Shown here: positions 29,917 through 62,475 of the stretch, piece after piece
How the letters are laid out: the number at the start of each line of letters is the position of its first letter
Numbering within the stretch: position 1 is the first letter of the stretch
Virus record (IMG/VR): IMGVR_UViG_3300025364_000003
Location: 1 to 64,000 of that record
Direction: 5' to 3' (one strand)
DNA length: 64,000 bases
The notes under the pieces: model-generated
Told to the model about the DNA's origin: nothing
Databases searched by the model: none
What the model saw: the letters and a program-made list of their open reading frames with translations, nothing else
Program-made: the position numbers and the translations under genes

Positions 29917-30234
29917 GTGGATATTCGGCCCGGCCAACTGGTACTTGCGAAATCAGATTTTGAGGCTAGTGAAATTTCTATTGATTGGCATGTCGAACAA
30001 TCTCTTCCTAGGGATCAACGAAAAACTTTAAGACATGTTCGAATAAAGAAAAATGAAATACTGTTTATAACGAACAGTCCAACAGAAGACACTTTTTTTC
30101 TACAATATGGGCATGGTACACAAATAAAAAGACACATGGTTACATTCCTTCGAGGTAAGTCATTGTGTTTTATGGTGACCGTGGTTGGACTAGAAGAGTA
30201 TATTGAACCAGTTGACTATTCAGAGCATGTCTAA
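29917..30234 (+). CDS. small beta-barrel paralog family A member
   Basis: IRPGQLV ... ILFI ... FLRGKSL pattern. Confidence 0.6.
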   Translation: MDIRPGQLVLAKSDFEASEISIDWHVEQSLPRDQRKTLRHVRIKKNEILFITNSPTEDTFFLQYGHGTQIKRHMVTFLRGKSLCFMVTVVGLEEYIEPVDYSEHV

Positions 30235-30523
30235 AATCTTACAATCGTGGGATACCATACCCGATGGTTCGCTAGTCAAATTTAAAGTACGTTCGACACA
30301 GATACAGAATTTTTCTGAAACGTATCTTTGGGATTCCCCAAAAGAGCCATACGAACAAACTAAAATCAACAAAGAAAGAATTTATTTGGTGGTTTCCTCC
30401 GCTCCAGAATATTATGAATGCCGACTCACCGGTCGAATTATATTCACTTTGCTCGACGCCGACAAAGTCAGATATTTTTTCTGCGCTACCAACCCCTTGA
30501 ATATTTTTAATATCTTATTATAG
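30227..30523 (+). CDS. paralog family A member
   Basis: IPDGSLVKF ... IYLVV ... LLDADKV. Confidence 0.6.
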   Translation: MSKILQSWDTIPDGSLVKFKVRSTQIQNFSETYLWDSPKEPYEQTKINKERIYLVVSSAPEYYECRLTGRIIFTLLDADKVRYFFCATNPLNIFNILL

Positions 30524-30538
30524 AGCAGCCTCAATTGG

Positions 30539-30567
30539 TTTACAAGCATTAGCTTGGATGATATTCT
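30539..30567 (+). promoter_or_regulatory. sigma70-like promoter
   Basis: TTTACA-N17-TATTCT, extended TG. Confidence 0.65.
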
Positions 30568-30620
30568 TCCTAAGTGGCTCAAGCCACAAAACTAACCCTA
30601 AACATTTACATGGTGATATA

Positions 30621-30971
30621 ATGAGCAAGGATTCTGTTAAAAACAGCGATAGTCAATCCAAAGATAGTGATAAGACAACAAGGCGCCGTCGTCGGGCAGA
30701 ACGCAATAAAATGCGTACCATTAAGCACATTCACAAACTCCTGGATTCCTTCCAGGAAGGTGTGCTTAGTGGGTTTTCAAATGATAGCTGGGTTGAACTT
30801 GCTGGTACCTACCGTCAGCTTTCTCCCTTTTTGGCAACAAACGAGTATGAAGCTCTCGGCTATGTTTGGCGCACGGCTTGGACGCAGAATCCTGATCAAG
30901 ATTCCGTGGAACAGCTAATTGGTGCAATTAAAGACCGGGTGGAGGGAAAGACCCAGCCTACCATTGGATAG
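30621..30971 (+). CDS. hypothetical protein (monocistronic)
   Basis: own promoter upstream and terminator downstream. Confidence 0.7.
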   Translation: MSKDSVKNSDSQSKDSDKTTRRRRRAERNKMRTIKHIHKLLDSFQEGVLSGFSNDSWVELAGTYRQLSPFLATNEYEALGYVWRTAWTQNPDQDSVEQLIGAIKDRVEGKTQPTIG

Positions 30972-31026
30972 GTGCTATTACCTATTCTTTATCCTGATAG
31001 CCAAGCCTTAGTTTGCCTATAAAGAC

Positions 31027-31060
31027 AAAAAACCCCCTCCGGTTTCCGGGGGGGGTTTTT
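31027..31060. terminator. intrinsic terminator (possibly bidirectional)
   Basis: A6-CCCCCTCCGG-TTT-CCGGGGGGGG-T5. Confidence 0.85.
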
Positions 31061-31133
31061 ATTTATTGTGGTTGAATCTGGCTTGACTATTTGTTATATT
31101 CTTCATGTGGGATACAAAAGAAAACATAGACGT

Positions 31134-31459
31134 ATGCCGACGCCGAAACATGACCAAAGAGTAGGAAAGGTGTATATTCTGCGGACAGGGCAGACTTTGG
31201 ACATCAAGACCGATGATGGAATTAGAACAAACCAAAGTTTTGAAGATGATACCAAATTCTTGTTTTTGGGCGTTGGTAAATCGCTCGGAAGACCCTTCAA
31301 GGGAAGATATTTCGGGAAAGGTGCTTCCCAAAAGGTGCTTCCCAAAAGGTTCATCGGTTTCTAGCAGGGGAAAAAATTATCAAAGTGGTAATGTTTTCTT
31401 GTGAGTTTGGGCACAAGTTTAGGCTTTTATATCAACCAAACATGGAAGCAAAATGTTAA
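31134..31459 (+). pseudogene. paralog family A member frameshifted by a 14-bp tandem duplication
   Basis: AAAGGTGCTTCCCA x2 at 31317-31344; removing one copy gives ...VHRFLAGEKIIKV...KC* overlapping the next ATG. Confidence 0.75.
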
Positions 31460-31878
31460 AGTATCTAAAGTCCGCAGAAAAGCTTGCACTTGAACACGAG
31501 TATGATGAATTGTTGGGGTATTACCTCTGTGCCCTTATCGTAAAGGGTGGCAACATCTTGAGTGTTGGCTTCAACAAGAAGTCTACCAATGGATTTGTTG
31601 AGCATTTTGCAGACCTCGTTCGAGGTGAGCGTGACTACTGCCTCTCCACCCATGCTGAGATGGATGCTGTTTTGAGGGCACGAGGCAAGCTTGATCTTCG
31701 GGGAACCAAGATTTATGTGGTTCGTATTAAGCCCTCTGGTGGGCTTGGCATGGCAAAGCCGTGTGAAATTTGCGAACATGTACTTTTCAACTATGGCATC
31801 CGTCGTGCTTATTATTCGATCAATGACAACGAGTACGGTGTTATGAAGGTTGTCAATCCTGCAAAGAGGTATCAGTGA
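31453..31878 (+). CDS. cytidine/dCMP deaminase-superfamily zinc protein
   Basis: THAEMDA ... AKPCEIC. Confidence 0.85.
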   Translation: MLKYLKSAEKLALEHEYDELLGYYLCALIVKGGNILSVGFNKKSTNGFVEHFADLVRGERDYCLSTHAEMDAVLRARGKLDLRGTKIYVVRIKPSGGLGMAKPCEICEHVLFNYGIRRAYYSINDNEYGVMKVVNPAKRYQ

Positions 31879-32264
31879 CATTGTCCCTAGACATAGGAAG
31901 CGTTGCATATCTAGACGAGAATGGATGCTTTCATAAAGCAATAACAGTAGTTTTCAACAATCCAATTATTTTGGCTGGCAAGGGAAGTTTGTGGACAGTT
32001 GTTGATGACGATCCGCTTGAACGGATATTGAGGTTTGTTTCAAACCCAAAAAGCTACTATGTTAGTAACTTTCGTTCTTATGAACAAGAAGGCAATAGCG
32101 CACACTATGCTCGTTATGGTGATACGCTACTATTTCTTGGTGATGTTTTCGAAACTGAAAAAGATAGATTTCTGAAAATGCTGCTTACTCTCAATGAAGA
32201 AAAAACAAGTTATGTACTATGGGGTAATGAAATAGAGTGCTGCAAGTATTTGATGCCCCTGTAA
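31875..32264 (+). CDS. paralog family A member (divergent)
   Basis: LDIGSVAY ... LLFLG ... MLL. Confidence 0.5.
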   Translation: MTLSLDIGSVAYLDENGCFHKAITVVFNNPIILAGKGSLWTVVDDDPLERILRFVSNPKSYYVSNFRSYEQEGNSAHYARYGDTLLFLGDVFETEKDRFLKMLLTLNEEKTSYVLWGNEIECCKYLMPL

Positions 32265-32321
32265 GAATATGCCAAAGCGGATCGAAATCGAAATAAATAA
32301 CCCTCCGACCTGGGAAAGAAA

Positions 32322-32468: not shown

Positions 32469-32497
32469 AATTAAAATGAAAAACAAATAGAGCAATA

Positions 32498-32773
32498 ATG
32501 ATTAGAGTTGGTGATTTAGTAAAACTAAAAAAGAACAGTCGCAATTTTATTTCAATTCGATTAGTTCACAAAGACAAGTATTCTTATGAAGAAAAAGCCT
32601 ATTTTGTTTCTGAGCCACCTCTTTTGGTTTTGGACATATTCCAGTTGAAACCAGCTCCGCATTTGCATTATGATAGACCTTATAGAGTGAAGGTTCTACA
32701 CGAGGGTAAGATTTGGCTCCTTCGATTCGGCAAGGCTGATTCATTCACTCGTTTCTTTAGAAAGGTAACATAA
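32498..32773 (+). CDS. paralog family A member
   Basis: IRVGDLVKL ... LLVLD ... VLHEGKIW. Confidence 0.65.
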   Translation: MIRVGDLVKLKKNSRNFISIRLVHKDKYSYEEKAYFVSEPPLLVLDIFQLKPAPHLHYDRPYRVKVLHEGKIWLLRFGKADSFTRFFRKVT

Positions 32774-32856
32774 AATGGGTAAAAAGGCTCCGCTACAGAT
32801 GCGCTGGTCAAAGCAAGAGGAGGAATCCGAGCAAGGTAACAATAATTTATAAGCGG

Positions 32857-32885
32857 TTCAGAGAGTCTCTGGTCAATGCTATACT
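32857..32885 (+). promoter_or_regulatory. sigma70-like promoter for the non-coding locus
   Basis: TTCAGA-N17-TATACT with extended TG. Confidence 0.6.
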
Positions 32886-33198
32886 GAACATGTCCTCGAA
32901 ACGAGGTTGAGATTGAAACGCTTGAATCAGCGACACTCTATTAGAGTGTAATGCTAACTGTTATCCTCAAAATAATAATGAAGGAAGGCGATCGCAATGA
33001 AGTAGTTATTTTCCGACTTGGAGTGATTTAATTTTGGAATAGCATTGAATATTTTAGACACTAAACGAGTAAGAAAATGGCAAGAGATTCGCCTTAAGAT
33101 GTTCTTTTTGTTTTATAAAAAACCGGAGCAGTCCTACTGTGGGGTTTCTACTGTGAAGGTTCTATTGATGCTTATGAAGCCCCACTAAAATAAAATCG

Positions 33199-33271
33199 AA
33201 GCCAGTAGTTTACAACAGGAAAAATACCTCATTTTTATGAGGAGACTCCGGTTCAAATCCGGGCTGGTTTC
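33199..33271 (+). tRNA. aberrant tRNA-like element (Lys/TTT-like, 6-nt anticodon loop)
   Basis: AAGCCAG/CTGGTTT acceptor, GTTT/AAAT D stem, CCTCA-TTTTTA-TGAGG, TCCGG-TTCAAAT-CCGGG. Confidence 0.6.
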
Positions 33272-33274
33272 CTA

Positions 33275-33350
33275 AGATAGCATCATTGGTTATATCATGG
33301 TTTCTTCTAAAAACTCATGATTAACGGTTCAAATCCGTTAGTGCTATCTA
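33275..33350 (+). tRNA. aberrant tRNA-like element (Arg/TCT-like, collapsed D loop)
   Basis: AGATAGCA/TGCTATCT ends, GGTTT-CTTCTAA-AAACT anticodon arm, AACGG-TTCAAAT-CCGTT T arm; D arm only TGGT-TAT-ATCA. Confidence 0.55.
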
Positions 33351-33761
33351 AATTTACCCCTGGAAACAGGGCAAGAGCGATCTCAAGTAAGTGTCTGAAC
33401 CTATTCTTGAGACATTTCTGTAAGGCGACACCAGGCAGAACGCTCAAAATCTCCGTGTGAAGGTGGTTGTTGGTGGGCTCAAATTGATGCAGAGGGCGAA
33501 AGAATGCAAGCATTCTTGGGTGTTGCATCAAAAATTTTGCAGGCAAAACTCTACAAACGCTGGTGCGATGGGAGAAAAGCGAGCACCTGCCTGTAATCGA
33601 GAGGTCAAATGGTAAAGCGAAACGATAATTTTTCTTTGGAACCGCAAGAAGCAACGCTTTTGTATGCTGCAAGCGAATGCTATAAAAAGGTGACTTCTCG
33701 TCATCTTGCGAAACATTCTGGCGCCGGGAGTCGTCCCAGGGACGACACTTACGATTCAAAC

Positions 33762-33974: not shown

Positions 33975-33987
33975 TTTAAGTCAGTAA

Positions 33988-34350
33988 ATGAAATTAATTC
34001 CTGGAAAGCTATACAAGCCCAAAGAAGGCTTAATTGGGCCTAAAAGCTCCAAATATCCCTCTAACAGGGAGGCAATTATCTTATTTACACAGGCGAGCCA
34101 AAATCCAGAAAGACCACTGCATCATTACTATCTTTATGCGACCACAGAAAAACCGCCCATTTTGTTTGTTGAAATGGACGAGCTTACTGAGTTGCGTTTA
34201 GAATATTTGGGTTCAAGATATTATCATAATTTTCCCAGGGCTAAGCCGGACATGCACATTAAAATAAATGCTGGAAAGTTTCTTCACGAGGATCGATTTG
34301 TTTGGGTACTTGAAGACGTGCTTCCAGTATTGGAGATTGTAAACAAATGA
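33988..34350 (+). CDS. paralog family A member
   Basis: LIPGKLYK ... ILFVE ... FLHEDRFVWV. Confidence 0.65.
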   Translation: MKLIPGKLYKPKEGLIGPKSSKYPSNREAIILFTQASQNPERPLHHYYLYATTEKPPILFVEMDELTELRLEYLGSRYYHNFPRAKPDMHIKINAGKFLHEDRFVWVLEDVLPVLEIVNK

Positions 34351-35669: not shown

Positions 35670-36194
35670 TTGGAGGCTGTGGTCATGCTTGAACTTTTAT
35701 TGGGGTTTGTTCTTTTTTTACTGGGCTGTCTTTATGGTAATTTTGTTGAATGGTTTGTGCACAGATACATTCTTCATGCACTTGCCAAACGCATGAAAAA
35801 TTTTCGCCCTCTCTCTTTTCATTTGCAAGAACATCATGTTGCAACATTGAAAAATGATTATAGAGATCCGTCGTATACAAACGACCCCATGTGGACAGTA
35901 AATCCAAAAACTCTTGAATTTTTTGGAATATTGGGAATGGCATTGCCACATGTCGTTCTTTTTTGGGTCTCAATTCCTTTTGCAATAGGCACGCTTTTTT
36001 GGATCGCATTTCATTATTTTGCTCACGTTATTTCTCATGTCAGGCCAGATATTGGGAAAAAATATTTTCGAGTTCATTATGACCACCACATGGGTGGCGA
36101 CATGGAAAAGAACTTCACTGTAACTGTACCTGTCATGGATTACCTTTTTGGCACTCGAAAAAAGTTCAGTGGCTCCAAATCCACAAATAAATAA
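35670..36194 (+). CDS. fatty acid hydroxylase / sterol desaturase family membrane di-iron protein
   Basis: EWFVHRYILH, HLQEHH, HVISH, HYDHH histidine boxes, NF..T.PVMDYLFGT; TM helices. Confidence 0.8.
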   Translation: MEAVVMLELLLGFVLFLLGCLYGNFVEWFVHRYILHALAKRMKNFRPLSFHLQEHHVATLKNDYRDPSYTNDPMWTVNPKTLEFFGILGMALPHVVLFWVSIPFAIGTLFWIAFHYFAHVISHVRPDIGKKYFRVHYDHHMGGDMEKNFTVTVPVMDYLFGTRKKFSGSKSTNK

Positions 36195-42000: not shown

Positions 42001-42231
42001 ATGATTAAAAAGAAAAAGCCAAAAGGTCGATCATTAGCAGAAAGACTTTCTAAAAAGAAGCATGATAAAGCTATCAGGCTCGGAAAGTTTCTTTACGAGT
42101 GTGTCGGCGGTGCTCATCAGCCTGAAGGTTGTGGAAACAAATGGTCTTCCAATCCTCTAAAAGGACACCCAGAAAAATGTCCACGTTGTGGAAACAAATA
42201 CTATAAATGGTTGAATTACCCAAATGTTTAA
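42001..42231 (+). CDS. small basic zinc-ribbon protein
   Basis: YEC...CGNKW...CPRCGNKY. Confidence 0.6.
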   Translation: MIKKKKPKGRSLAERLSKKKHDKAIRLGKFLYECVGGAHQPEGCGNKWSSNPLKGHPEKCPRCGNKYYKWLNYPNV

Positions 42232-42511
42232 ACCTGGACAGCTCATTGGGCCAATGAACCAACATCATTTCCGGTTTGATTGTTATCGTTTAGAAGAGCT
42301 TGATAAGGTGTCCAATATTTGGACATCGGGAGCACCTCATGTGCTGCTTGGTGACAGCAATGTAGTTATGTTTGTGAAATTGATCACAAGAGAATTCCCT
42401 AACGTATATAAATTGCACAAGATGGTTATATTTCACAGTGAAAGACTTTGGACTTCTTCGGATTGGCTTCAAACAGAAGAAATTAAAGGTGGTTGGAAGC
42501 TAAAACCGTAG
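42224..42511 (+). CDS. paralog family A member
   Basis: FKPGQLI ... VMFVK ... FHSERLW. Confidence 0.6.
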   Translation: MFKPGQLIGPMNQHHFRFDCYRLEELDKVSNIWTSGAPHVLLGDSNVVMFVKLITREFPNVYKLHKMVIFHSERLWTSSDWLQTEEIKGGWKLKP

Positions 42512-43414: not shown

Positions 43415-43660
43415 ATGAGCAGTGATCACGTTGAAATGGAAGGTACTATCATTGATAGCACCAAGGGCATTTTTCGGGTAGAGCTTGAGCAGTTGCAGCC
43501 GAACGGCGAACCAACCGTTATCCTCTGCACAATTGCAGGAAAACTTCGAAAAAATAAAATCAATTTGCTGGTAGGAGACAATGTCAAGATCAAGATCAGC
43601 CCATATGACCTCTCCCGAGGAATCATCTTCTACCGAAACAAGAAACAGCGACAGCGTTGA
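43415..43660 (+). CDS. infA: translation initiation factor IF-1
   Basis: VEMEGTI...FRVEL...ILCTIAGKLRKNKINLLVGDNVKIKISPYDLSRGIIFYR. Confidence 0.92.
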   Translation: MSSDHVEMEGTIIDSTKGIFRVELEQLQPNGEPTVILCTIAGKLRKNKINLLVGDNVKIKISPYDLSRGIIFYRNKKQRQR

Positions 43661-44075
43661 AGTTAATACCAATCCTCTTGCAGTTTGCCTCCAATTTGGA
43701 ACAAAGATAGACTTTGCTGTAGGTCAAGTCTATTATGACTTCTCTGGCGAAGAGACGAAGTATTGGCTTGAGGTTGAAAAACCTGGCGATGACATTTCCA
43801 ACGTTATACCAGGCGGCGGGGTGCTCGTCAAGCCCAGGGTATCCAATAGGTTTGGTACCCCACTCTTGTTTCTAGGATGGAAGAACGGAAAACATTTTAT
43901 TACCGAGACCTCGCAACGCCCGGTGAACTATCTTTATTTTTTGTCTGAAGACAAAATCGTAGGCGTTGTTGCTAAGCTGTTACCAATGATGTTTATCACA
44001 CATGTTCAGCTTTGGCCTCACGATGAAACGTTAGTGCATAAAAATGTCTACTATTATAACAAAAAAAATCCGTAG
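43581..44075 (+). CDS. paralog family A member (start uncertain)
   Basis: FAVGQVYY ... LLFLG ... FLSEDKIV. Confidence 0.55.
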   Translation: MSRSRSAHMTSPEESSSTETRNSDSVEVNTNPLAVCLQFGTKIDFAVGQVYYDFSGEETKYWLEVEKPGDDISNVIPGGGVLVKPRVSNRFGTPLLFLGWKNGKHFITETSQRPVNYLYFLSEDKIVGVVAKLLPMMFITHVQLWPHDETLVHKNVYYYNKKNP

Positions 44076-44297
44076 GAAGGTTGGAGCACTCTATAAACTT
44101 GCCAATCCCGATGGCGCCCCCTACCTTTTCGTTTTTCCAAAAGCGCAAATGGAACGTATGGAAAGTTGCAAAAAGCCAATGAGGGCGATCTTGTGCTTTA
44201 CCTTGGAAAACATTCCAAATTTAAGATCAGAGCCATTTGGAATGATTACGTGTGCGCCATAGACGAATTTTTTGTGTCAGAATCAAAGGTAATTTAA
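44044..44297 (+). pseudogene. paralog family A member with 1-nt frameshift
   Basis: RKVGALYKL..YLFVF then -1 frame near T5 run 44132-44136 reads SKSANGTYGKLQKANEGDLVLYLG...KVI* overlapping the next ATG (TAATG). Confidence 0.6.
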
Positions 44298-47758: not shown

Positions 47759-47788
47759 AAAAAAGCTCCCGAGTGGGAGCTTTGTTTT
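47759..47788. terminator. bidirectional intrinsic terminator
   Basis: AAAGCTCCC-GAGT-GGGAGCTTT between convergent gene blocks. Confidence 0.85.
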
Positions 47789-48379: not shown

Positions 48380-48759
48380 ATGTCCTCTTCATCTGCGAAA
48401 CGCTCGGAATAAACTGCATCCGGGCCTTCGTTTTTGACTCGTCGAGCCAGGCTGGGGTCTAGTTTTTGCAAAACGTCATAAAGGGCCGTACGATTGTGCT
48501 TATCATTAGCATTATAAAGGTATAGTGTTCGCACAATTTCGCCCTTTACGGCTTCAAGATCTGGATTTGCTGCAATAGCATCTTCTTCAAGGCGCTGTCG
48601 AATCTTATCTTCAACACCAAGATAGAAAGCATCAAGATGACCTTTGTTTTTTATGAGTTTTTCTACATTTGCAGCCAATCCTTCAGGGCTGTGTTGCCAG
48701 GATTTTCGAATTTTTTCGAGTTCCTCATTGGTCACAATAAAATCAAGCGTAATTTTCAT
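48376..48759 (-). CDS. hypothetical protein
   Basis: coupled ORF. Confidence 0.65.
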   Translation of the reverse strand: MKITLDFIVTNEELEKIRKSWQHSPEGLAANVEKLIKNKGHLDAFYLGVEDKIRQRLEEDAIAANPDLEAVKGEIVRTLYLYNANDKHNRTALYDVLQKLDPSLARRVKNEGPDAVYSERFADEEDI

Positions 48760-49066
48760 CTTTCACCATTTCAAGTTCTTGAGCAAACACCCAAAAGGAA
48801 CGAACATGACCTTCGATAACAACAATTAGCTTTACTAGGAAAAACTTGCTGCCATCAAATGAAAACTCAAGCGTGTCAACAACTTGACCAAGTAAATTCT
48901 TGGGGATGATATTACACAGATAAAGCATTTCTGGGTTTGAAACCCATTGCTTCTTACTTGTGTTTCCGCACCAACACTGAATTGTCGTCGGTTCATGCGT
49001 AGTTTGCATTGGTTTGGTAAGAACCAAACTGCCTGCTGACAATTGCTCTAAAATGTTATCAGGCAT
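48743..49066 (-). CDS. paralog family A member
   Basis: LSAGSLVL ... LLGQVV ... VIEGHVRSFW. Confidence 0.55.
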   Translation of the reverse strand: MPDNILEQLSAGSLVLTKPMQTTHEPTTIQCWCGNTSKKQWVSNPEMLYLCNIIPKNLLGQVVDTLEFSFDGSKFFLVKLIVVIEGHVRSFWVFAQELEMVKDENYA

Positions 49067-49369
49067 CTTCTTCGAGAATGGGTACAAGATTGTGGTAATG
49101 CGTCCAGCAAATGCGTGGGTCCACATCTTTTGAAATGATAATTTGAGCAGCCATTACTTGGCCTTTTATTTTAAGCACTTGACCAGTGGTCATTACATTA
49201 GGAGGTGCTGAATCAGTTGTGAACCTGGCAGCGTAATAGCACTGCTCTGGCTTCTCAAAAAGCGTGTATGGACCATCTATTTTATGGATGCCGACGTAGT
49301 TGCTATTTTATGGATGCCGACGTAGTTGGAATCGTATTCTACAACTTCATAAGATGTTGCTTTAGACAT
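49059..49369 (-). pseudogene. hypothetical gene frameshifted by a 26-bp tandem duplication
   Basis: CTATTTTATGGATGCCGACGTAGTTG x2 at 49277-49328; removing one copy restores MSKATSYE...LEEDA* overlapping the next start. Confidence 0.75.
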
Positions 49370-52691: not shown

Positions 52692-53129
52692 ATGCCTGCC
52701 GAGAAAAATGATGAGCTTATTTTCAAGCATCCGGTTCTTGCTGATCTCCGAGACATCTCGGAGATTGATCGAGTCAAAATTAAGCATGCTGACTTCAACA
52801 CGGGCTGCATTATCGTTACGATTGACGGCGAAGATATTTCGTTTGAGGGGGTAATGCGCTCATTGAGGTTTGTTGATCTTCTGGAAAAGATGGAAGTTCA
52901 GGCTGTGGATTTTGAGACGGGTGAAATTACTGTCCGTTGGCATCCCAAGGGCGCACCTAAGGTGTACGCCCACCTCAATATTAGCCAGGCCGAGATTGAT
53001 TCCATCAAGGCTGGAAACAAGATTTATGCAATCAAGTTAGCTAGGGCCCGAACTGGTTTGGGGCTAGCGGATGCTAAGAAGCTCATCGAGGATGCCGCTG
53101 ATGAACTTAGGCGACGAGGACTGTTGTAA
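52692..53129 (+). CDS. protein with C-terminal ribosomal protein bL12 CTD-like domain
   Basis: GNKIYAIKLARARTGLGLADAKKLIE. Confidence 0.7.
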   Translation: MPAEKNDELIFKHPVLADLRDISEIDRVKIKHADFNTGCIIVTIDGEDISFEGVMRSLRFVDLLEKMEVQAVDFETGEITVRWHPKGAPKVYAHLNISQAEIDSIKAGNKIYAIKLARARTGLGLADAKKLIEDAADELRRRGLL

Positions 53130-55579: not shown

Positions 55580-55582
55580 GCG

Positions 55583-56074
55583 ATGAATCTATCAGAAAAA
55601 TTCAAACCTGGCGTCTTGATTAAGCCCAAAGAAGACAGACTTCATAATACGCTAGAGACTCAGCAAGCAGTATTTGAAACTGGAAGGGTGTTATACAAAA
55701 CACATGAAACAGCCTTGGGCAAAATTTGGGTTGCCGATGGTTATCGATACACATTGGAGGATGAGCACAAGGGAAGCGATTGGAAAAACTTTTTACACCG
55801 AGTTGAACCCAATGATGTTTATATGATTTTAAAAGCTCCTGCGTTTTGTATGATACCAAAATATTTCAGACGCACATATGCCGAACTTGAAAAGAAACAT
55901 CCTATTTGTTTTCTTAATATGATGGTTTCTTACGGTCAAAACAATTGGGAAATACCCATTGTTGTGTCAGAGGCATCTTCACTGTCACGTAAATTGATGT
56001 ATGAAAAAGAACTTGGTGTACTGTTTTCCGATCCAGATATTTGGTATTCACAGATTTTCGAACCAGTTGGGTGA
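55583..56074 (+). CDS. paralog family A member
   Basis: FKPGVLIK ... VYMILK. Confidence 0.55.
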   Translation: MNLSEKFKPGVLIKPKEDRLHNTLETQQAVFETGRVLYKTHETALGKIWVADGYRYTLEDEHKGSDWKNFLHRVEPNDVYMILKAPAFCMIPKYFRRTYAELEKKHPICFLNMMVSYGQNNWEIPIVVSEASSLSRKLMYEKELGVLFSDPDIWYSQIFEPVG

Positions 56075-56077
56075 TCT

Positions 56078-56527
56078 ATGGCAAAACATACACATATCAA
56101 ATTGTTTAAGCCCGGAACGTTGATAATACCAGAAATCGGCTTCTGGCTCAACATCAATTCAGCAGCCTGGAAAATCCGAGTAGAAAACCCATCGGCAAAA
56201 CTGCGTCCCCTTATCCGAGATGCAGACAAAATGCTGCTTGGGGCACTGCTTGATGAGGCTCATGTTGGACTTGTACTTCTTGATGAAATTGAGGAGTTTC
56301 CATATCAACAAGTATTACCACCAATCTTTTGGTGGGAACACTTGTTGATTCTGATTCGAGGTCTATACTCTGAGCAAGTTGTAAGAGTACGAAAGACAAC
56401 ATTGCTATTTGGCCAAAGGAAAGCAGTTGTGGAAGTAAACGAATCTTTACTGGAAAGCACTTTGTCGATTTCCAATCAAGCCTGGAAAGTAGTTTCCAAC
56501 CCAAAATCGGAGGACTCAAATGAGTGA
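56078..56527 (+). CDS. paralog family A member
   Basis: FKPGTLII ... LVLLD ... LLFGQRK. Confidence 0.55.
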   Translation: MAKHTHIKLFKPGTLIIPEIGFWLNINSAAWKIRVENPSAKLRPLIRDADKMLLGALLDEAHVGLVLLDEIEEFPYQQVLPPIFWWEHLLILIRGLYSEQVVRVRKTTLLFGQRKAVVEVNESLLESTLSISNQAWKVVSNPKSEDSNE

Positions 56528-56888
56528 CAAATTTGACAAATACATGAAGACATATAGCGCTAAGATGCTGCTTGAAAAGCACTCCCTTGAAGAAACCAAT
56601 ACCTGGGAAGTCCGGGGAGAAGATCCGAATTGTGATTTCGGTGGACCTCATCACCAGCCGCTCCTTGGCATTTTTGAGGGCGTGCTTTACGATGTCATCG
56701 AGCACGCAGTAGAACTTCCAGGATTTTGGCAATGGGGTGCTGGTGGTGACATCAAAGCTCGCAGAGTTACAAAAGTTGTCAAAATCAACCCTCAAACAAG
56801 AGCAAAACGTCAGGAAATCCGCAATAGAATCCAAGCGCTGGAATCTGAGCTTGCCTCCCTTAAAAAGCAACTTGACGATTTGACATGA
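56520..56888 (+). CDS. hypothetical protein with C-terminal coiled coil
   Basis: GGAGG SD; WEVRGEDPNCDFGG. Confidence 0.7.
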   Translation: MSDKFDKYMKTYSAKMLLEKHSLEETNTWEVRGEDPNCDFGGPHHQPLLGIFEGVLYDVIEHAVELPGFWQWGAGGDIKARRVTKVVKINPQTRAKRQEIRNRIQALESELASLKKQLDDLT

Positions 56889-57385
56889 ATAACGAACTCA
56901 AATGTCGCTTCCCGCCTCATTGGGAAGGAATGGATCGGGCAAGGGAAAAAACAGAGTTAGTTAGAAAAGAAAACAGCATTTTCATGGATAGCCTAGAGCC
57001 CGGAATGTTGTTTCGTCCTGTGACGAAAAATGGAATGTTGTTTAATAGTGAACAACTTTTGAAATTGTTTGACGACAACAACCGTGATTTTAGTGACATA
57101 ACCCTTTTTGAACTTGAAAAGTTGTTGCTTAAAACCAAGGATTCACTCGTTCTAATCAACGAGTATAAGAATTTTAATGAGGCCAAAGACTGGTTCTTCT
57201 TGTTAAGCACATCTTTTCAAACAGTGTGGACGGCTGGTGTCTATCTCGAACAATATTTTCCAAATCCTGACAGCACCGAGGGTTATAGATTCATCGAATC
57301 TCTTTGGGGGGAAACACGAGTCTTTGTGTGTTATCCTACCAATAGGCACAAGTTAATAAAAAATGAAATCGAATTCAAGACATAA
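56885..57385 (+). CDS. paralog family A member
   Basis: LEPGMLFR ... FFLLS ... LWGETRVFV. Confidence 0.55.
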   Translation: MNNELKCRFPPHWEGMDRAREKTELVRKENSIFMDSLEPGMLFRPVTKNGMLFNSEQLLKLFDDNNRDFSDITLFELEKLLLKTKDSLVLINEYKNFNEAKDWFFLLSTSFQTVWTAGVYLEQYFPNPDSTEGYRFIESLWGETRVFVCYPTNRHKLIKNEIEFKT

Positions 57386-57755
57386 GCTAGAAAAGGGTTG
57401 CCTGATAAAACTGTCAGGTTCATATCTCCGATTTGATCGGAAGAAAAAAAAGCTTTTGTTTCCAGGAGTTATAAAAGACTTTTTCATCAAACGTGTAGCC
57501 AATGATAACGAATTTCATTCGCATGATGATCATAAAGAGGAATCGTTAGTTGGCTATTGGTTTGTATGTGAAAATGAGAATGCTCCTTTCTTGTATTTGG
57601 ACTATTGGAGCATCCCTCTAGGTAAAAAGACTCATGGAGCAGACCCCATTATAGAGCACCACTTTAGAGTATTATTTGAAGAAAAAATGCTTGATCTCAT
57701 TTTTGTAACAGAAATGGGCTTTTCGGCACCAGAGTTATTCGAGGTAATTCAATGA
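57363..57755 (+). CDS. paralog family A member
   Basis: LEKGCLIKL ... FLYLD ... VLFEEKM. Confidence 0.6.
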   Translation: MKSNSRHKLEKGCLIKLSGSYLRFDRKKKKLLFPGVIKDFFIKRVANDNEFHSHDDHKEESLVGYWFVCENENAPFLYLDYWSIPLGKKTHGADPIIEHHFRVLFEEKMLDLIFVTEMGFSAPELFEVIQ

Positions 57756-58087
57756 AAATAAGAGATGTCGATTCCAGGTTTGTTGAAGTCCCAATGGAAA
57801 TACTGACATCTTATTCTGAAGTCAATTCGGAAATATTTAGGGATTGGCTTCAACTGCGAGATTGTAAAGCAGGTAGTTTGTTTTCATCAAAAGATGAGTT
57901 GCGCTTTAATCAACGCCATATTGGTAAAGGTGACATAGTCATGATTATAAGCGCTACGTTTACGGTGGTGAAAGCACAAAAAGTTTGGGCCGAATTTATC
58001 TTCCTGCATGAAGATCATGTTCATACCATAGAGATTCCGGTAACAAACTGGCAAGCTTGGTTCACTCCTCTTAAAAATGAAGCCTGA
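57752..58087 (+). CDS. paralog family A member
   Basis: CKAGSLF ... IVMII ... FLHEDHV. Confidence 0.6.
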   Translation: MKIRDVDSRFVEVPMEILTSYSEVNSEIFRDWLQLRDCKAGSLFSSKDELRFNQRHIGKGDIVMIISATFTVVKAQKVWAEFIFLHEDHVHTIEIPVTNWQAWFTPLKNEA

Positions 58088-58307
58088 AGTAAAAATAGGC
58101 AAGATTTACGAACTAAGAATTCCTCCTCACGAATCACATGAAGGCAAATATGTGATCGTAACGGAAATTATTCCTTGTTCAGTGACATTCGACAAGCGGC
58201 CAACTTATAATTTTCATTTGCTTTAGGGCGAAAAAATTATTGTCAAACACACGACTGAAGATTTTTTCTTTGCATGGTTTAAAGAAGCGAGTAATAGTAA
58301 TGATTAA
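58077..58307 (+). pseudogene. paralog family A member with in-frame TAG
   Basis: MKPEVKIGKIYEL...FHLL*GEKIIV...ND*; TAG at 58224-58226. Confidence 0.65.
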
Positions 58308-58581
58308 AGTTGGACAACTTTGGCAGGCTCTCGAAAATATCGAAGTCAATGACTACACCTACTACTTTACAACAGTCGATTTCAAACCCGCTGTTGTTCT
58401 CAGACATGAAATTGTTATGATAACAAAGGTCATCGAAGTAATGAAGAGCGACCCCACTTCATTTTATTGGATTGAGTTCCTTTCAAGAGATAAAAGGTGC
58501 TTTGTTCACAATGTCACATATATGTGGATGCAAAAACATTTCTTGCAAATGCAACCAGAGGTTTATCAGGAAACTTTATAA
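58300..58581 (+). CDS. paralog family A member
   Basis: IKVGQLW ... IVMIT ... FLSRDKR. Confidence 0.6.
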   Translation: MIKVGQLWQALENIEVNDYTYYFTTVDFKPAVVLRHEIVMITKVIEVMKSDPTSFYWIEFLSRDKRCFVHNVTYMWMQKHFLQMQPEVYQETL

Positions 58582-58618
58582 GTTTTATTCGTTTTCTCAT
58601 ATGTGCTATGGTTTGAGC

Positions 58619-58942
58619 ATGGGCATTTCATCCGAAAATTGGTTCCCTCCTTCGTATTCATCTGAGCTGGTAACTAAGCTAAAAGCTAAAAATCAAGATT
58701 CTTGTTTTGCTCCACCATGGAAGAAAACACACTGTTATCATCGAGCTGTTCCTGGTTTTAGTCCAGAATTACAATGCAAGAGAAATCCAGTTTGGTGGCA
58801 CCCAGATTGCGTGGATGCCTATTGTGATTTTCATGTGACCACAAGAATGAAAAAGTACATGCGGGCAAAGTGGGCTCGTAGCTTATATCAAATGACAATA
58901 GATGAAATCTGTTTAGCCTATCCTCATATCACGCTTTTCTAA
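58619..58942 (+). CDS. Trp/Cys-rich paralog family B member
   Basis: WFPPSYSSEL ... C ... WWHP ... YCDFH ... W. Confidence 0.65.
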   Translation: MGISSENWFPPSYSSELVTKLKAKNQDSCFAPPWKKTHCYHRAVPGFSPELQCKRNPVWWHPDCVDAYCDFHVTTRMKKYMRAKWARSLYQMTIDEICLAYPHITLF

Positions 58943-59298
58943 TGAATAAAAAATACAAATCATCTGTAAACTTTTCCCCGCCCAATTTTTGGACCCCTCC
59001 CAGGTATACAAGAGAGTATGCACAACATATTGCTGAAAGAATTAGCTATTACCACGACGTGGTACTGCATTCCAAAATAGAGTTTCCGTTGTACAGGGGT
59101 ACAAAACTAACATGCAGCAACGGTTATTGTAAATCAAATTCGGATGACATTTGGTGGACCCCGATAAAAAGCGAAAGCTCATACTGTTCAGCATGTGCAA
59201 CACCAAATTATAAATCTAGCGTATATCGCCAATGGCTAATAACCAGCTATTTCTACTTTCTGGACAATAAAGGCTTATTAGAGAAGTTTGTCAAATAA
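58942..59298 (+). CDS. paralog family B member
   Basis: WTPPRYTRE ... WWTP ... YCSAC ... W. Confidence 0.65.
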   Translation: MNKKYKSSVNFSPPNFWTPPRYTREYAQHIAERISYYHDVVLHSKIEFPLYRGTKLTCSNGYCKSNSDDIWWTPIKSESSYCSACATPNYKSSVYRQWLITSYFYFLDNKGLLEKFVK

Positions 59299-59318
59299 AC
59301 ACTAAGGAGATAAACGAG

Positions 59319-59713
59319 ATGACGCAAACAAGCCAAGTGACCAAATTGGTTCCAGAAAATTGGTCACCTCCCAAGTGGTCCAAGGAATTAATGAAAGAGT
59401 TTCATGATTTAATGTTGCCACATATGAAATATGATAACCACAGACACAAAATTCAATTCTTAAATCAAAAGCCTCTTTGCGTCGTCAAAAAAGCAAAAAC
59501 CTCGCCACTGGTATCATTTGAGTACAATTACATTCCTTGTAACAAGGACCTTGTAACAAGGATGGAGTTTGGTGGGCTCCTGTTGTTACAGATACTTATT
59601 GCGAAGAGTGTATTGATTATTTTCTCAAAGATATTTTTTACACCATTTGGCAGCAAATAAAAGTGGAGCTTACCTATTGTCGTCTTAACAAATTTTGGCG
59701 GCTCCATGAGTAA
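59319..59713 (+). pseudogene. paralog family B member frameshifted by a 14-bp tandem duplication
   Basis: CCTTGTAACAAGGA x2 at 59535-59562; removing one copy restores CNKDGVWWAPVVTDTYCEEC...LHE*. Confidence 0.8.
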
Positions 59714-59984
59714 GCAAGATTTAGCAACCAAACGAATGGATATATACAAAGCCAAGCCTGGTATGTTGGTTGTAAACCAAACATGGCTTTCGTGTCTTGA
59801 TCATAACAATTTGAAAATTCAGCTCACCCCCTACAAACTTATGCTTCTGGTCAGTGTTGAGGTTTTCATATATAAAAATCGCTGTTACGTTCGAAGCGAC
59901 ATTCTGTTAGAAGAAAAAGTTTATCGGCTTCTCGAACTAAGCAAAGAAAAATGGAATGAAAGTTTTAGAATAGTCTTACCATGA
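59706..59984 (+). CDS. paralog family A member
   Basis: AKPGMLVV ... LMLLV ... LLEEKVY. Confidence 0.6.
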   Translation: MSKQDLATKRMDIYKAKPGMLVVNQTWLSCLDHNNLKIQLTPYKLMLLVSVEVFIYKNRCYVRSDILLEEKVYRLLELSKEKWNESFRIVLP

Positions 59985-60184: not shown

Positions 60185-60225
60185 ATGATATTAGCACCAA
60201 TATGCTTGATTGAAAAAAGATAATC

Positions 60226-60534
60226 ATGGATATTCTCTCAGAACCAGATTGGAGACCACCAAAAATAAGCAGTGAACTGCTTATCAAAATAAAGCCGTTC
60301 ATCCATGATTATGAATATTTCATGGCTACCGAACATAAATGCCAACACTTTGTCTCTACCGTAGATGAAAAATATGAATGTCACAATGAAATAACTTGGT
60401 GGTGCCCACAGTCAGGCGATTGCTTTTGCGAAGAACATGTCACCTCAGGATTAACCAATTTTCTAAAACAACAATGGCGATGGATTCGATATCAATACTT
60501 TATCAAAGAAATCTTTCCTAAACTTAAGAAATAA
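60226..60534 (+). CDS. paralog family B member
   Basis: WRPPKISSEL ... WWCP ... FCEEH ... W. Confidence 0.7.
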   Translation: MDILSEPDWRPPKISSELLIKIKPFIHDYEYFMATEHKCQHFVSTVDEKYECHNEITWWCPQSGDCFCEEHVTSGLTNFLKQQWRWIRYQYFIKEIFPKLKK

Positions 60535-60565
60535 CCATTTCTTATAAGTTTTTGGCGCCCCCCAT

Positions 60566-60889
60566 ATGACATATCATCCCAATATCCTCCAGAAAAATAA
60601 ACACAACATATGGACCCCTCCCAAGTGGTCCAATGAACTAATACTCTGGTGTGAACAATACTCCTCCATCTCAGATTACCTAAAGTTCTCCCCACCCCAC
60701 TGCTCAGCTTGTAACTCATACCCCATATGGTGGTTCCCACAGACTTATATCGCCTACTGCCAAAAACACGCAGACAAAGGTTGGGTCTCCCTATGTTCCA
60801 AAGTCTGGTTCCAAACCCTCTATGAATTCAACCTCTTCCTACTAACAAAAGAAGGGAAAATACCACATGACCCATATGCCAAACTGTAA
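60566..60889 (+). CDS. paralog family B member
   Basis: WTPPKWSNEL ... WWFP ... YCQKH ... W. Confidence 0.7.
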   Translation: MTYHPNILQKNKHNIWTPPKWSNELILWCEQYSSISDYLKFSPPHCSACNSYPIWWFPQTYIAYCQKHADKGWVSLCSKVWFQTLYEFNLFLLTKEGKIPHDPYAKL

Positions 60890-60900
60890 ACTGCACACAA

Positions 60901-61167
60901 ATGAAAATTGCACTTATAAGTTTCATCAAATACAACATACTAAACCCTAACAATAGACCACTAGTAGAACTACCCTCCTGTATCAATAAACTTAGCCTCA
61001 CTAAACATATAGGTCACATTTGGTGGCAACCCTTCTCAGATATCGCTGTATGACAAAATCATCTCGATAACGTCCATAAATCCTGGTTCTATACCAAATG
61101 GTTACTACTCAAATATCATAGAACTCTAACACATATTCAAGAAATATTCCACTCCTACTACCAATAA
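60901..61167 (+). pseudogene. paralog family B member with in-frame TGA at the conserved Cys
   Basis: IWWQPFSDIAV*QNH versus IWWFPQTYIAYCQKH in the neighbour; TGA 61051-61053. Confidence 0.65.
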
Positions 61168-61375
61168 CTTCTCTAACAAAAGACACATAATTTTTTTCAT
61201 AACAATTTCTATATTCCGTCAGATGAGGTTTTTTAAAGAATGTTTACTTTTGGCCTGTTATGTGCGATTATGAGGCAAGAGAGGGTACTGAGGGGGTTTT
61301 GAGAGAGCTTTAGGGGTGCTTTAGGGGTAATACCCCTTCACGGAACGATTCTCATGGGAAAACGAAAACGTTGAT
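61168..61375. other. non-coding strand-skew switch point; candidate replication origin or genome terminus
   Basis: C-rich/G-poor to the left, G-rich/C-poor to the right; GCTTTAGGGGT x2 and palindrome AGGGGTA-A-TACCCCT. Confidence 0.45.
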
Positions 61376-62020
61376 ATGGATACAAAAACGCACATTTTGA
61401 CTCGATCTCTCCCTAAGGGGGAAACAACTTTGGGGGAGTCATCTTCTGGGGGATTTGCATCAACTAGTAGTTCTGGTTCTACTGTGGTATTGAAGGATTA
61501 TCGTCCTAGGTGGTCCAATCATCTTTTTGGTCCGGGTACATTGGTAGAGACGAGGCACAGTTATGGTGGTAAGGGATTGGTTAGGAGGGTGAGTCAGTAT
61601 CCTGGGTTAATGAAGAGGGGGTATGGGACTGAACATGCTATTGAGTTTAGTTGGTATGTGAGGATGGACTCATCTGTTCTACCTGAGGGAGAAGAGATGT
61701 TGTTGGGCAGGATAAGGGAAATTGCGTATCAGGATGGTGGTCGGGAGCCATTGAGGTTTCCTGATTCTCCTTATAGTGCGAAGTTGGTACCGGTTGGTGC
61801 CCTGGGTATGGTGGTGACTTATGTTAGGGTGGGGAGAACATTTACATTTCTTGAAGAAGAATTTCTTCCTTCGTTGGATGACCCAAATTTCTATATTGTT
61901 TACTTTCAGGAATACCTTGACATTGTTAAAGCAGGACTTTATTTGGTTCCTGTAAAAGAAACAAAAAAAGCGAAAGAAAGAACTTCTTATGAAGAAGGTT
62001 TAGAGATTAGTGTTTGGTAA
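61376..62020 (+). CDS. hypothetical protein (family A-like C-terminal part)
   Basis: FGPGTLVE ... LGMVV ... YIVYF. Confidence 0.55.
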   Translation: MDTKTHILTRSLPKGETTLGESSSGGFASTSSSGSTVVLKDYRPRWSNHLFGPGTLVETRHSYGGKGLVRRVSQYPGLMKRGYGTEHAIEFSWYVRMDSSVLPEGEEMLLGRIREIAYQDGGREPLRFPDSPYSAKLVPVGALGMVVTYVRVGRTFTFLEEEFLPSLDDPNFYIVYFQEYLDIVKAGLYLVPVKETKKAKERTSYEEGLEISVW

Positions 62021-62041
62021 ACAAAAGAAAGAATATTAAAG

Positions 62042-62100
62042 AAAAAAGCATGACAACCAATTAAGGTGTCATGCAATTAAGGTGTCATGCTTTTCTTTTG
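62042..62100. terminator. bidirectional terminator containing a 16-bp tandem duplication
   Basis: AAAAAAGCATGACA...TGTCATGCTTTT; CAATTAAGGTGTCATG x2 at 62058-62089; convergent genes. Confidence 0.75.
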
Positions 62101-62112
62101 TGTCAAGTCACT

Positions 62113-62475
62113 TTAGTTATTTTTCATACGAAACTTTTTTATGTATCGAAGATCTTTTTTTTCGATCCAAATTTTTGCTTCTTGATTGAAGAAAGAAAAG
62201 TAAGTGTAAGGAGAGAACATTCCATCTGTTCTCTGAACAATTGTTTCGCCAATGTAAACAAAGGGAGGAGAGCCTACCCATCTCCAGGCCCAGGCCCCTG
62301 TAATCTTACGGTCATCTTCAGAAGAGTAAGCAACAGGTTCCGTGTTCTTTCTTCTGGTATAGAGCTTACCTACCTGTAGTAGGATAGGCTTACCAGGATA
62401 AGTGTGAAAATATGAAGGAGCCTGACCTTGTGAGAATTCCCCAGGGTTGTAGATGTAACGATCAGGCTCCCTCAT
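62113..62475 (-). CDS. paralog family A member
   Basis: LQVGKLYT ... FVYIG ... FFNQEAKIWI. Confidence 0.55.
   Translation of the reverse strand: MREPDRYIYNPGEFSQGQAPSYFHTYPGKPILLQVGKLYTRRKNTEPVAYSSEDDRKITGAWAWRWVGSPPFVYIGETIVQRTDGMFSPYTYFSFFNQEAKIWIEKKDLRYIKKFRMKNN

What the first reader, a model, noticed from the sequence alone, without database searches (positions are those of the whole stretch)
29917..62475. Massive expansion (~20 copies) of a divergent small beta-barrel family
Seen: about 20 ORFs of 75-215 aa share h-x-(P/V)-G-x-L-h at the start, a variable insert, a hydrophobic strand (LLFLG/IVMII) and a C-terminal (F/V/L)L-x-(E/G)-x-K-h hairpin: 29917, 30227, 31134, 31875, 32498, 33988, 36961, 42224, 43581, 44044, 48743, 55583, 56078, 56885, 57363, 57752, 58077, 58300, 59706, 61376, 62113. 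They are interspersed between recognisable genes and at least four are broken. Inference: an SH3/KOW/Tudor-like scaffold with hypervariable loops under birth-and-death evolution, as expected for a repertoire of host-binding or anti-defence proteins. Similarity is by eye and weak.
Basis: partly seen in the sequence, partly recalled or inferred. Interest (0 to 1): 0.65.

Follow-up and report, generated by a model that had tools for sequence, protein, structure and literature searches.

The report
Expanded SH3-like small-protein family in phage
A roughly 205-kb phage from hypersaline lakes carries dozens of fast-diverging copies of one small, previously unnamed protein family with a predicted SH3-like barrel fold, which probably act as a varied set of binding modules, though their function is untested.

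Summary
The window is the first 64 kb of a 206.5-kb phage contig from hypersaline-lake metagenomes. Members show no pairwise similarity, but four independent tests link them. (1) The N-terminal motif is about 30-fold enriched over shuffles. (2) With that motif cut off, leave-one-out profiles still recover the C-terminal parts. (4) AlphaFold2 and ESMFold models match SH3-like barrels, with the same best PDB match (3g1j) for both AlphaFold2 models.

Of the 21 listed places:
- 12 are supported.
- 3 are broken copies (two frameshifts, one in-frame TAG), and the broken forms recur in other assemblies.
- 3 are marginal.
- 3 rest on the motif only.

The genome holds about 35-40 copies. Orthologues diverge faster than their neighbours, and one syntenic slot holds 3-4 copies here against about 28 in the relative, so birth-and-death evolution is supported. 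No Pfam, PHROG or PDB sequence match exists. A host-binding or anti-defence role is inference only.

The parts
29917..30234 (+). family member, 105 aa, supported
   Evidence: L027-only HMM 9.8 bits, above every decoy, aligned over HMM positions 2-89. hhalign P 0.0055.
30203..30523 (+). marginal member (ATG at 30227)
   Evidence: Rank 32 of 1,195, where about 5 false hits are expected. hhalign P 0.026. Its block 1 reads DG, not PG/VG.
31068..31456 (+). broken copy: blocks 1-2 in the ORF 31068-31364, block 3 in another frame (31280-31456)
   Evidence: Three-frame reading. The L027 HMM finds the shifted piece at 7.8 bits, above the decoy maximum of 6.4. The 76-aa product from 31134 is on 7 contigs of other assemblies.
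31875..32264 (+). family member, 129 aa, supported
   Evidence: Leave-one-out rank 5 of 1,247 and 8 of 320. Non-window HMM p = 4e-4.
32498..32773 (+). family member, 91 aa, the best-supported copy; folded
   Evidence: 40 bits to the L027-only HMM. Orthologues in L012 and L027. AF2 pLDDT 85 with SH3-like matches. ESMFold pTM 0.77.
33988..34350 (+). family member, 120 aa, supported
   Evidence: Leave-one-out rank 3 of 1,247 and 1 of 320. Together with its L012 orthologue, hhalign P 5.8e-5 over the full length. Its Atlas structure neighbours are the same viral clusters as for 32498.
   Evidence: hhalign P 0.24, like the controls. Leave-one-out ranks 156 of 1,247 and 118 of 320. It is a positional counterpart of family member L012:13710, which also follows the 2OG-Fe(II) oxygenase gene.
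42224..42511 (+). family member, 95 aa, supported
   Evidence: Two tandem homologues in L012 (E 3e-14 and 2e-5). The three together against the L027 profile give hhalign P 4.7e-5 over 87 columns.
43581..44075 (+). family member, 164 aa with an N-terminal extension, supported
   Evidence: L027 HMM 8.8 bits. Non-window HMM 12.6 bits, p = 1.4e-4. hhalign P 0.0017.
44044..44294 (+). broken copy: block 1 in the ORF 44044-44262, blocks 2-3 in another frame (44097-44294)
   Evidence: Three-frame reading. The L027 HMM finds the shifted piece at 6.4 bits, equal to the decoy maximum. The same 72-aa product is in another JGI assembly.
   Evidence: L027 HMM 6.4 bits, rank 19, with 0.8 false hits expected; blocks 2-3 align.
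48743..49126 (-). family member, 127 aa, supported at moderate level
   Evidence: Rank 27. hhalign P 0.0034 over the full length.
55583..56074 (+). family member, 163 aa with an insert of about 80 aa, supported at moderate level; folded
56078..56527 (+). marginal member
   Evidence: Clear block 1. hhalign P 0.025. Worst leave-one-out rank, 583 of 1,247.
   Evidence: hhalign P 0.29. Leave-one-out ranks 189 of 1,247 and 99 of 320.
57363..57755 (+). family member, 130 aa, supported
   Evidence: L027 HMM 6.9 bits. Non-window HMM 10.0 bits, p = 1.4e-4. Leave-one-out rank 8 of 1,247.
57752..58087 (+). family member, 111 aa, supported
   Evidence: L027 HMM 12.5 bits, above every decoy (maximum 9.5).
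58077..58304 (+). broken copy: a 49-aa ORF ends at an in-frame TAG (58224-58226) inside block 3; the same frame continues with block 3-4-like residues
   Evidence: The identical 49-aa product is in two other JGI assemblies that are 99.97-100% identical in DNA. TAG ends 62 other ORFs, so there is no sign of recoding.
58300..58581 (+). marginal member, 93 aa
   Evidence: Leave-one-out rank 5 of 320 with block 1 removed. But hhalign P 0.14, and it is not recovered.
59706..59984 (+). family member, 92 aa, supported
   Evidence: L027 HMM 6.6 bits. Non-window HMM 8.3 bits, p = 1.4e-4.
   Evidence: Leave-one-out ranks 73 of 1,247 and 34 of 320. hhalign P 0.24.
62113..62475 (-). family member, 120 aa, supported
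   Evidence: L027 HMM 8.7 bits aligned over positions 2-79. Leave-one-out rank 1 of 320. hhalign P 0.0016.

Best explanation
The ORFs belong to a lineage-specific multigene family of stand-alone small proteins, mostly 80-165 aa.

Shown here:
- Their core is predicted to be an SH3-like five-stranded barrel.
- Four conserved blocks form the core: strand a (x-P/V-G-x-L-h), strand b (P-P-h-L-Y-L-G-like), the c-d hairpin with a tight turn (h-F-L-H-E-G-K-h-h) and the last strand (F-x-x-V).
- The segments that vary in length and sequence lie between blocks 1-2 and 2-3. These are the positions of the RT and n-Src loops, which flank the ligand site of canonical SH3 domains.
- The family grew by tandem duplication in a small clade of roughly 205-kb hypersaline-lake phages. 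It diverges faster than its neighbours, and it gains and loses copies, including pseudogenes.
- The genome holds about 35-40 copies. About 15-18 of them, counting 3 broken ones, lie in the stated span.

Inferred, about 0.35 on its own: the copies are binding modules with different specificities. They would be made alongside the auxiliary genes that surround them (nucleotide metabolism, repair, chaperone) and would each bind a different host or phage macromolecule during takeover or counter-defence.
For: Family reality:
- Motif enrichment.
- Leave-one-out recovery with and without block 1.
- Candidate-candidate Smith-Waterman scores exceed candidate-background scores, p = 5e-10.
- hhalign of the 42224 and 33988 orthologue groups against that profile gives P about 5e-5 over the full length.

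Fold:
- AF2 of 32498, pLDDT 85, with DSSP order strand, long hairpin, strand, loop, hairpin, short helix, strand.
- The second model has the same best match.
- ESM Atlas neighbours carry SH3_3 or SH3_13.
- Two members converge on the same unnamed viral Atlas clusters.

Turnover:
- Pseudogenes.
- Orthologue identities of 30-40% against a median near 60%.
- Only 3 of 7 copies in the interval shared with L012 have a detectable counterpart.
- The syntenic slot between the 41983 and 46704 orthologues is 4.5 kb with 3-4 copies here and 14.5 kb with about 28 copies in L027.

Diverse surfaces: pI runs from 4.2 to 10.1.

Context: co-directional with dCMP deaminase, 2OG-Fe(II) oxygenase, UvdE, GNAT, cytidylyltransferase, SpoU, NUDIX, RNA ligase and DnaJ.
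Against: - No pairwise similarity among window members. Scores to independent profiles are low, mostly 4-12 bits.
- One unrelated control (SpoU) reached hhalign P 0.0025, so single members at P 0.002-0.005 are not individually proven.
- A half-against-half profile comparison aligned only single blocks, at P 0.006 and 0.011.
- The second AF2 model is poor. Both AF2 runs shared a family alignment, so their agreement is not fully independent.
- Nothing here bears directly on function: no RNA data, no fusion to a known domain, and the host is unknown.
Confidence: 0.72

Rival explanations
1. The family is real and SH3-like, but the copies are nucleic-acid-binding proteins of the KOW, Sm/Hfq, Sul7d/Cren7 or chromo-like kind. 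They would act as phage transcription or translation regulators or as DNA-coating proteins. This is what was proposed for the zinc-ribbon expansion of about 35 copies in Bacillus phage G.
For: - Structural neighbours include NusG/KOW, EF-P, CarD, Hfq, and the helicase and relaxase SH3 domains that contact nucleic acid.
- Several copies are strongly basic: pI is about 10 for 32498, 62113 and the copy at 66278.
- The surrounding genes deal with DNA and RNA.
- There is a precedent in phage G (PMC7824862).
Against: - 60% of copies are acidic, and pI runs from 4.2 to 10.1, which does not fit one shared nucleic-acid-binding surface.
- No conserved basic or aromatic surface residues appear outside the core blocks.
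- No sequence match to KOW, S1 or Sm families.
Confidence: 0.2
2. There is no single family. Several unrelated small beta-rich phage proteins share short generic strand motifs by convergence, and only a core of a few ORFs (32498, 33988, 42224 and their orthologues) is truly related.
For: - No pairwise hits among window members.
- Low bit scores; three listed ORFs do no better than controls, and one control gave a false positive.
Against: - The N-terminal motif predicts the C-terminal blocks once it is removed.
- An outside profile enriches the listed ORFs, 12 of 20 in the top 34 of 1,195.
- Alignments span all four blocks in the right order.
- The copies cluster in tandem arrays.
- In L027 the copies are similar enough for jackhmmer to join 16 of them, including the orthologue of window ORF 32498.
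Confidence: 0.08

Closest known systems
SH3-like small beta-barrel fold (SH3, SH3b, KOW, Tudor/CarD, NdhS/PsaE, FeoA)
   Same: The predicted topology is strand a, long RT-like hairpin, strand b, n-Src-like loop, c-d hairpin with a tight distal turn, short helix, strand e. The top 50 structural matches are nearly all of this class, and Atlas neighbours carry SH3_3 or SH3_13.
   Different: No sequence match to any Pfam SH3, KOW or Tudor family, to PHROGs or to PDB sequences. The conserved blocks (PG-x-L, PP-h-LYLG, FLHEGK) are not the canonical SH3 peptide-binding residues. The proteins stand alone rather than being domains of larger proteins.
Vibrio cholerae integron cassette protein VCH_CASS4 (PDB 3g1j)
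   Different: Only 12-13% identity, with no sequence-level link. The function of 3g1j is itself unknown. It is single-copy, not part of an expanded family.
Lineage-specific expansions of small domains in jumbo phages, for example the zinc ribbon of about 35 copies in Bacillus phage G (Iyer et al. 2021, PMC7824862)
   Same: Tens of copies of one small domain in a single phage genome of 200 kb or more. The copy number is similar (about 35-40), and function is proposed from the fold only.
   Different: A different fold (SH3-like barrel, not zinc ribbon), a different phage lineage and a different habitat (hypersaline lake). Here turnover is shown directly, by pseudogenes and by a syntenic slot holding 3-4 against about 28 copies.

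Membership tests
SH3-like small beta-barrel fold class | Five-strand barrel in the order a, RT loop, b, n-Src loop, c, distal turn, d, 3-10 or short helix, e | tested here: met
   DSSP of the pLDDT-85 model of 32498: E7-10, hairpin E18-25/E28-35, E42-49, E62-68, E71-77, H80-86, E87-89. This is a prediction, not an experiment.
SH3-like small beta-barrel fold class | Structural superposition on solved SH3-like domains | tested here: met
Pfam SH3 / KOW / Tudor sequence families | Match to a family HMM at or near its gathering score | tested here: not met
   No such hit for 20 window ORFs at E <= 1. For 18 A5 members there was a single sub-threshold SH3_CYT4 hit, E 0.017.
Canonical peptide-binding SH3 | Conserved aromatic and proline-binding residues (ALYDY motif, WW dipeptide, SNY) | tested here: not met
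   The conserved columns are G, L, P, Y/F, L, G, F, L and K of the core blocks only. No ALYDY- or WW-type columns are present.
Tudor / chromo-like readers | Aromatic cage of 3-4 conserved aromatic residues | tested here: inconclusive
   Trp and Tyr are frequent but not in conserved columns outside the core. No structure-based mapping was done.
Lineage-specific multigene family of a jumbo phage | Many paralogues in one genome, recoverable by a profile, arranged in tandem arrays, with copy number differing between relatives | tested here: met
   Arrays lie at 55.6-58.6 kb and 97.7-108.6 kb in this genome, and at L027:5737-15827.
Known anti-defence or host-takeover proteins | Homology to a characterised inhibitor, or a demonstrated effect on a defence system or host target | not testable with these tools
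   No PHROG or Pfam annotation at all. The host is unknown, and there are no expression or interaction data.

The most novel reading that the evidence does not exclude
The family is a phage-encoded repertoire of binders on one SH3-like scaffold. Its RT- and n-Src-like loops are diversified under an arms race, so that different copies neutralise different host defence or housekeeping proteins. The copy set turns over between closely related phages, as a viral counterpart of a diversified recognition-module family.
Probability: 0.22. Interest if true: 0.75.

Novelty: new member of a known kind. Interest (0 to 1): 0.5.

Why it matters
Most genes of huge phages are orphans, and here about one gene in eight of a 206-kb genome collapses into a single family. 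The family has a recognisable scaffold, a clear pattern of conserved core and variable loops, and direct evidence of rapid gain and loss. That gives a tractable entry point: a set of small, easily expressed proteins on one fold.

These proteins can be used to ask what large phages do with their 'dark' early and auxiliary genes. They can also be used to ask whether SH3-like barrels serve as diversifiable binders in viruses. The sequence family is absent from Pfam and PHROGs, so a new family model could annotate these genes in related metagenomic phages.

Tried and rejected
- All-against-all phmmer and jackhmmer from single members within the genome found no links.
- Free iteration of a family HMM within the genome over-fitted and drifted: training members scored high by construction and spurious ORFs entered. 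It was discarded in favour of leave-one-out and outside-trained profiles.
- A broader 'non-window' HMM came out diluted (255 positions) and was less sensitive than the L027-only model. It was used only as secondary support.
- Half-against-half hhalign gave only single-block alignments.
- The profile found nothing in four more distant huge-phage contigs or in six loci around DnaJ homologues, where decoys scored as well as real ORFs. The 461-kb IMG/VR record holding identical DNA could not be searched, and L012's record could not be reached.
- Database-wide searches found few relatives. The first found 2 proteins for 33988, one of them the query itself. The second found 7 representatives for the 32498 group. 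The third, with the L027 profile, found 6 proteins, 5 of them from the L027 contig.
- Megablast against known phages found nothing. tblastn with the SbcC-like protein found only 21-29% identical relatives.
- The sigma-70 promoter scan was at chance level, 47 sites against 42 +/- 8.
- No fusions to known domains were found in the longer members.
- TAG recoding was considered for the in-frame stop at 58224 and rejected. All three stops are used as ORF ends, with TAG ending 62, so no other genetic code was applied.
- Read laying was not used, because only DNA contig runs hold the stretch and no RNA run does.


Full report
**What the window is.** The window is bases 1-64000 of a single 206,528-bp contig. 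It is a phage, on three lines of evidence:
- PHROG hits to DNA polymerase, homing and other endonucleases, and alkylated-DNA repair.
- An SbcC-like 1,421-aa protein whose only relatives are 21-29% identical proteins of huge uncultured phages, Salicola phage SCTP-2 and Microcystis phage Mel-JY01.
- No near match among known phages.

Identical DNA occurs in an IMG/VR contig of 460,987 bp and in five hypersaline-lake metagenome runs; no RNA run holds it. All three stop codons end ORFs (TAA 139, TGA 104, TAG 62), so the standard code was used throughout.

The stated span is mostly one co-directional block of small genes. Interspersed among them are dCMP deaminase, a fatty-acid-hydroxylase-like protein, a 2OG-Fe(II) oxygenase, UvdE, a GNAT, a cytidylyltransferase, SpoU, an SprT-like protein, NUDIX, an RNA ligase and a full DnaJ.

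- The N-terminal pattern occurs in 11 of 61 small ORFs of the span, against 0.33 +/- 0.58 in shuffles. It occurs in 6 of 149 elsewhere, against 1.1.
- Candidate-candidate Smith-Waterman scores exceed candidate-background scores (Mann-Whitney p = 5e-10; the pairs are not independent).
- Leave-one-out profiles put 19 of 20 candidates in the top 15% and 7 in the top 1% of 1,247 real and decoy sequences.
The leave-one-out test repeated on the remainder put 13 of 41 in the top 5% (KS p = 5e-7). The ORFs I regard as chance regex hits (a cytidylyltransferase, a membrane protein and others) ranked like background.

So the N-terminal motif predicts the C-terminal blocks.

**Independent confirmation from another phage.** A two-sequence profile of 32498 and its orthologue, searched against 1.84 billion representatives, found only seven proteins. 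One of them, P0008, lies on a 205,193-bp contig from another sample. The 20 kb around it (L027) is an uninterrupted run of small genes, and about 28 of them show the same four blocks much more plainly. Inside L027, jackhmmer from one seed joins 16 proteins, including P0008.

I built an HMM from those 16 proteins only and searched it against all 1,195 six-frame ORFs of this genome plus five-fold decoys. It ranks 32498 first at 40 bits. The alignments run through all blocks in order.

hhalign against the same outside profile gave the following:

| Query | P |
|---|---|
| 42224 with its two L012 homologues | 4.7e-5 |
| 33988 with its orthologue | 5.8e-5 |
| 62113, 43581, 48743, 55583, 29917 | 0.0016-0.0055 |
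| 56078, 30203 | about 0.025 |
| 36961, 56885, 61376, 58300 | 0.14-0.29 |

The last group is indistinguishable from seven of the eight controls. One control (SpoU) reached 0.0025, so single sequences at the 0.002-0.005 level are supported by the sum of the tests, not by this one alone.

**Broken copies.** There are three.
- The ORF at 58077 ends after 49 aa at a TAG that falls inside block 3, and the same frame continues with block 3-4-like residues.
- The copy at 31068/31134 has blocks 1-2 in one frame and block 3 in another. The outside HMM finds that shifted piece at 31280-31456 at 7.8 bits, above the decoy maximum of 6.4.
- The copy at 44044 has blocks 1 and 2-3 in different frames. The outside HMM finds that shifted piece at 44097-44294 at 6.4 bits, equal to the decoy maximum.

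The truncated products recur in other JGI assemblies: 2 contigs for the 58077 product, 7 for the 31134 product and 1 for the 44044 product. The breaks are therefore features of the population and not assembly slips.

**Extent.** The family is not confined to 29.9-62.5 kb. Further copies lie at these positions of the same contig:
- 66278
- 97739 and 98147 (these two are related at E = 1e-21)
- 101951 through 108170, about 11 consecutive genes
- 163712(-), 172414(-) and 174855

46132 inside the span is a possible extra member. The total is about 35-40 copies in 206 kb, roughly one predicted gene in eight.

**Fold.** AlphaFold2 on 32498 with the family alignment gave pLDDT 85.2 and pTM 0.75. The order of elements is strand, long hairpin, strand, loop, strand-turn-strand, short helix, strand. 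That is the SH3 order: a, RT loop, b, n-Src loop, c, distal turn, d, helix, e.
- Foldseek found nothing at E < 1e-3 in the PDB or BFVD.
- The ESM Atlas search by shape gave SH3_3- and SH3_13-bearing clusters.
- 3g1j is described in the literature as an SH3-like protein with an unusual extended hairpin.

There is also evidence independent of my alignment. The Atlas holds ESMFold models of 32498 (pTM 0.77) and 33988 (pTM 0.57), whose neighbours carry SH3_3 or are RecD2 helicases. The two proteins also converge on the same two unnamed viral clusters, of 96 aa with 180 members and 94 aa with 66 members.

**Anatomy and evolution.** The consensus of the outside array is, in short, K-G-D-L-V at the start, then D-P-P-I-L-Y-L-G, then H-R-F-L-H-E-G-K-V-Y, and finally D-V-F-E-V. 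The conserved residues are glycines, prolines and hydrophobics of strands and turns. The segments between blocks 1-2 and 2-3 vary from a few residues to about 80, and these are the RT- and n-Src-like positions. pI runs from 4.2 to 10.1.

A related 134-kb contig (L012) is syntenic with 31.4-45.6 kb of the window.
- Family orthologues there are 30-40% identical, while neighbouring genes are 33-83% identical, with a median near 60%.
- Only 3 of 7 copies on each side have a detectable counterpart.

Between the orthologues of 41983 and 46704, the window has 4.5 kb with 3-4 copies and L027 has 14.5 kb with about 28. Together with the pseudogenes, this is direct support for tandem duplication, rapid divergence and loss.

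**Function.** Nothing here tests function. There is no RNA evidence, no fusion to a known domain, and the promoter scan is at chance level. My best reading is a set of small binding modules with differing specificities, used during host takeover or counter-defence. It rests on the scaffold, the placement of variability in the loops that form the SH3 ligand site, the varied charge, the turnover and the auxiliary-gene context. I put it at about 0.35.

The main rival, at about 0.2, is nucleic-acid binding of the KOW, Sm or Sul7d kind. This is what was proposed for the zinc-ribbon expansion of about 35 copies in phage G (PMC7824862).

**Novelty.** The fold class and the phenomenon (a lineage-specific expansion of a small domain in a jumbo phage) are both known. 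The sequence family is not in Pfam, PHROGs or the PDB, and it appears restricted to a small clade of roughly 205-kb phages. I rate it a new member of a known kind.

**Limits.** Only two structures could be folded. The larger IMG/VR record with identical DNA could not be searched, so the true genome size and copy number may be larger. The contig has no terminal overlap.

Noticed in passing
window 58472-58942, 58942-59298, 60226-60534, 60566-60889: A second, unrelated paralogous family of Cys/His/Trp-rich small proteins sits inside the same stretch. Pairwise phmmer E ranges from 1e-12 to 5e-4. There is no Pfam match.
   Followed up: partly
window 35670-36194 and G000 106506-107045: Two fatty-acid-hydroxylase-like paralogues (E = 1e-32), one in each of the two main clusters of the SH3-like family. 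This hints at a segmental duplication that carried family copies along.
   Followed up: no
IMG/VR contig IMGVR_UViG_3300005974_000004 (L001, L011) versus G000: Identical DNA lies at about 341.8 kb of a 460,987-bp IMG/VR contig, while the genome held here is 206,528 bp with no terminal overlap. By that offset the held contig would run past the end of the IMG/VR contig, so the two assemblies disagree on genome size or layout. A related contig is 205,193 bp.
   Followed up: partly
window 33199-33272, within the gene-poor gap 32773-33609: ARAGORN calls a tRNA-like element with an abnormal two-base anticodon, and Rfam does not confirm it. Ordinary tRNA genes lie at 4106 (Arg-CCT), 4184 (Arg-TCT) and 42557 (Ala-TGC).
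   Followed up: partly
window 52692-53129: A 145-aa protein with a ribosomal L7/L12 C-terminal-domain match (E = 1.6e-6), next to SprT-like, NUDIX, RNA ligase and a full three-domain DnaJ (54255-55385). This is an unusual set of translation and chaperone auxiliary genes for a phage.
   Followed up: no
window 47762-47783: A perfect 9-bp-stem hairpin flanked by T runs on both strands lies at the point where the + block (ending at 47757) meets the - block (starting at 47788). It looks like a bidirectional terminator.
   Followed up: no
window 58182-58211: The best sigma-70-like match of the 44-63 kb scan (11 of 12 positions) lies inside the pseudogenised copy 58077, just upstream of the next family gene at 58300. 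It may be chance, because the overall promoter count is at shuffle level.
   Followed up: no
window 51267-51788 (-) and G000 94036-94752: Another paralogue pair (E = 1e-16) of unknown function links the window to the region just upstream of the second family cluster.
   Followed up: no
window 31465-31941 (-) and 56211-56870 (-): Long antisense ORFs overlie real + strand genes (dCMP deaminase; 56078 and 56520). A naive longest-ORF caller picks them, and the antisense ORF of the deaminase even 'matches' the antisense ORF in the relative L012.
   Followed up: yes
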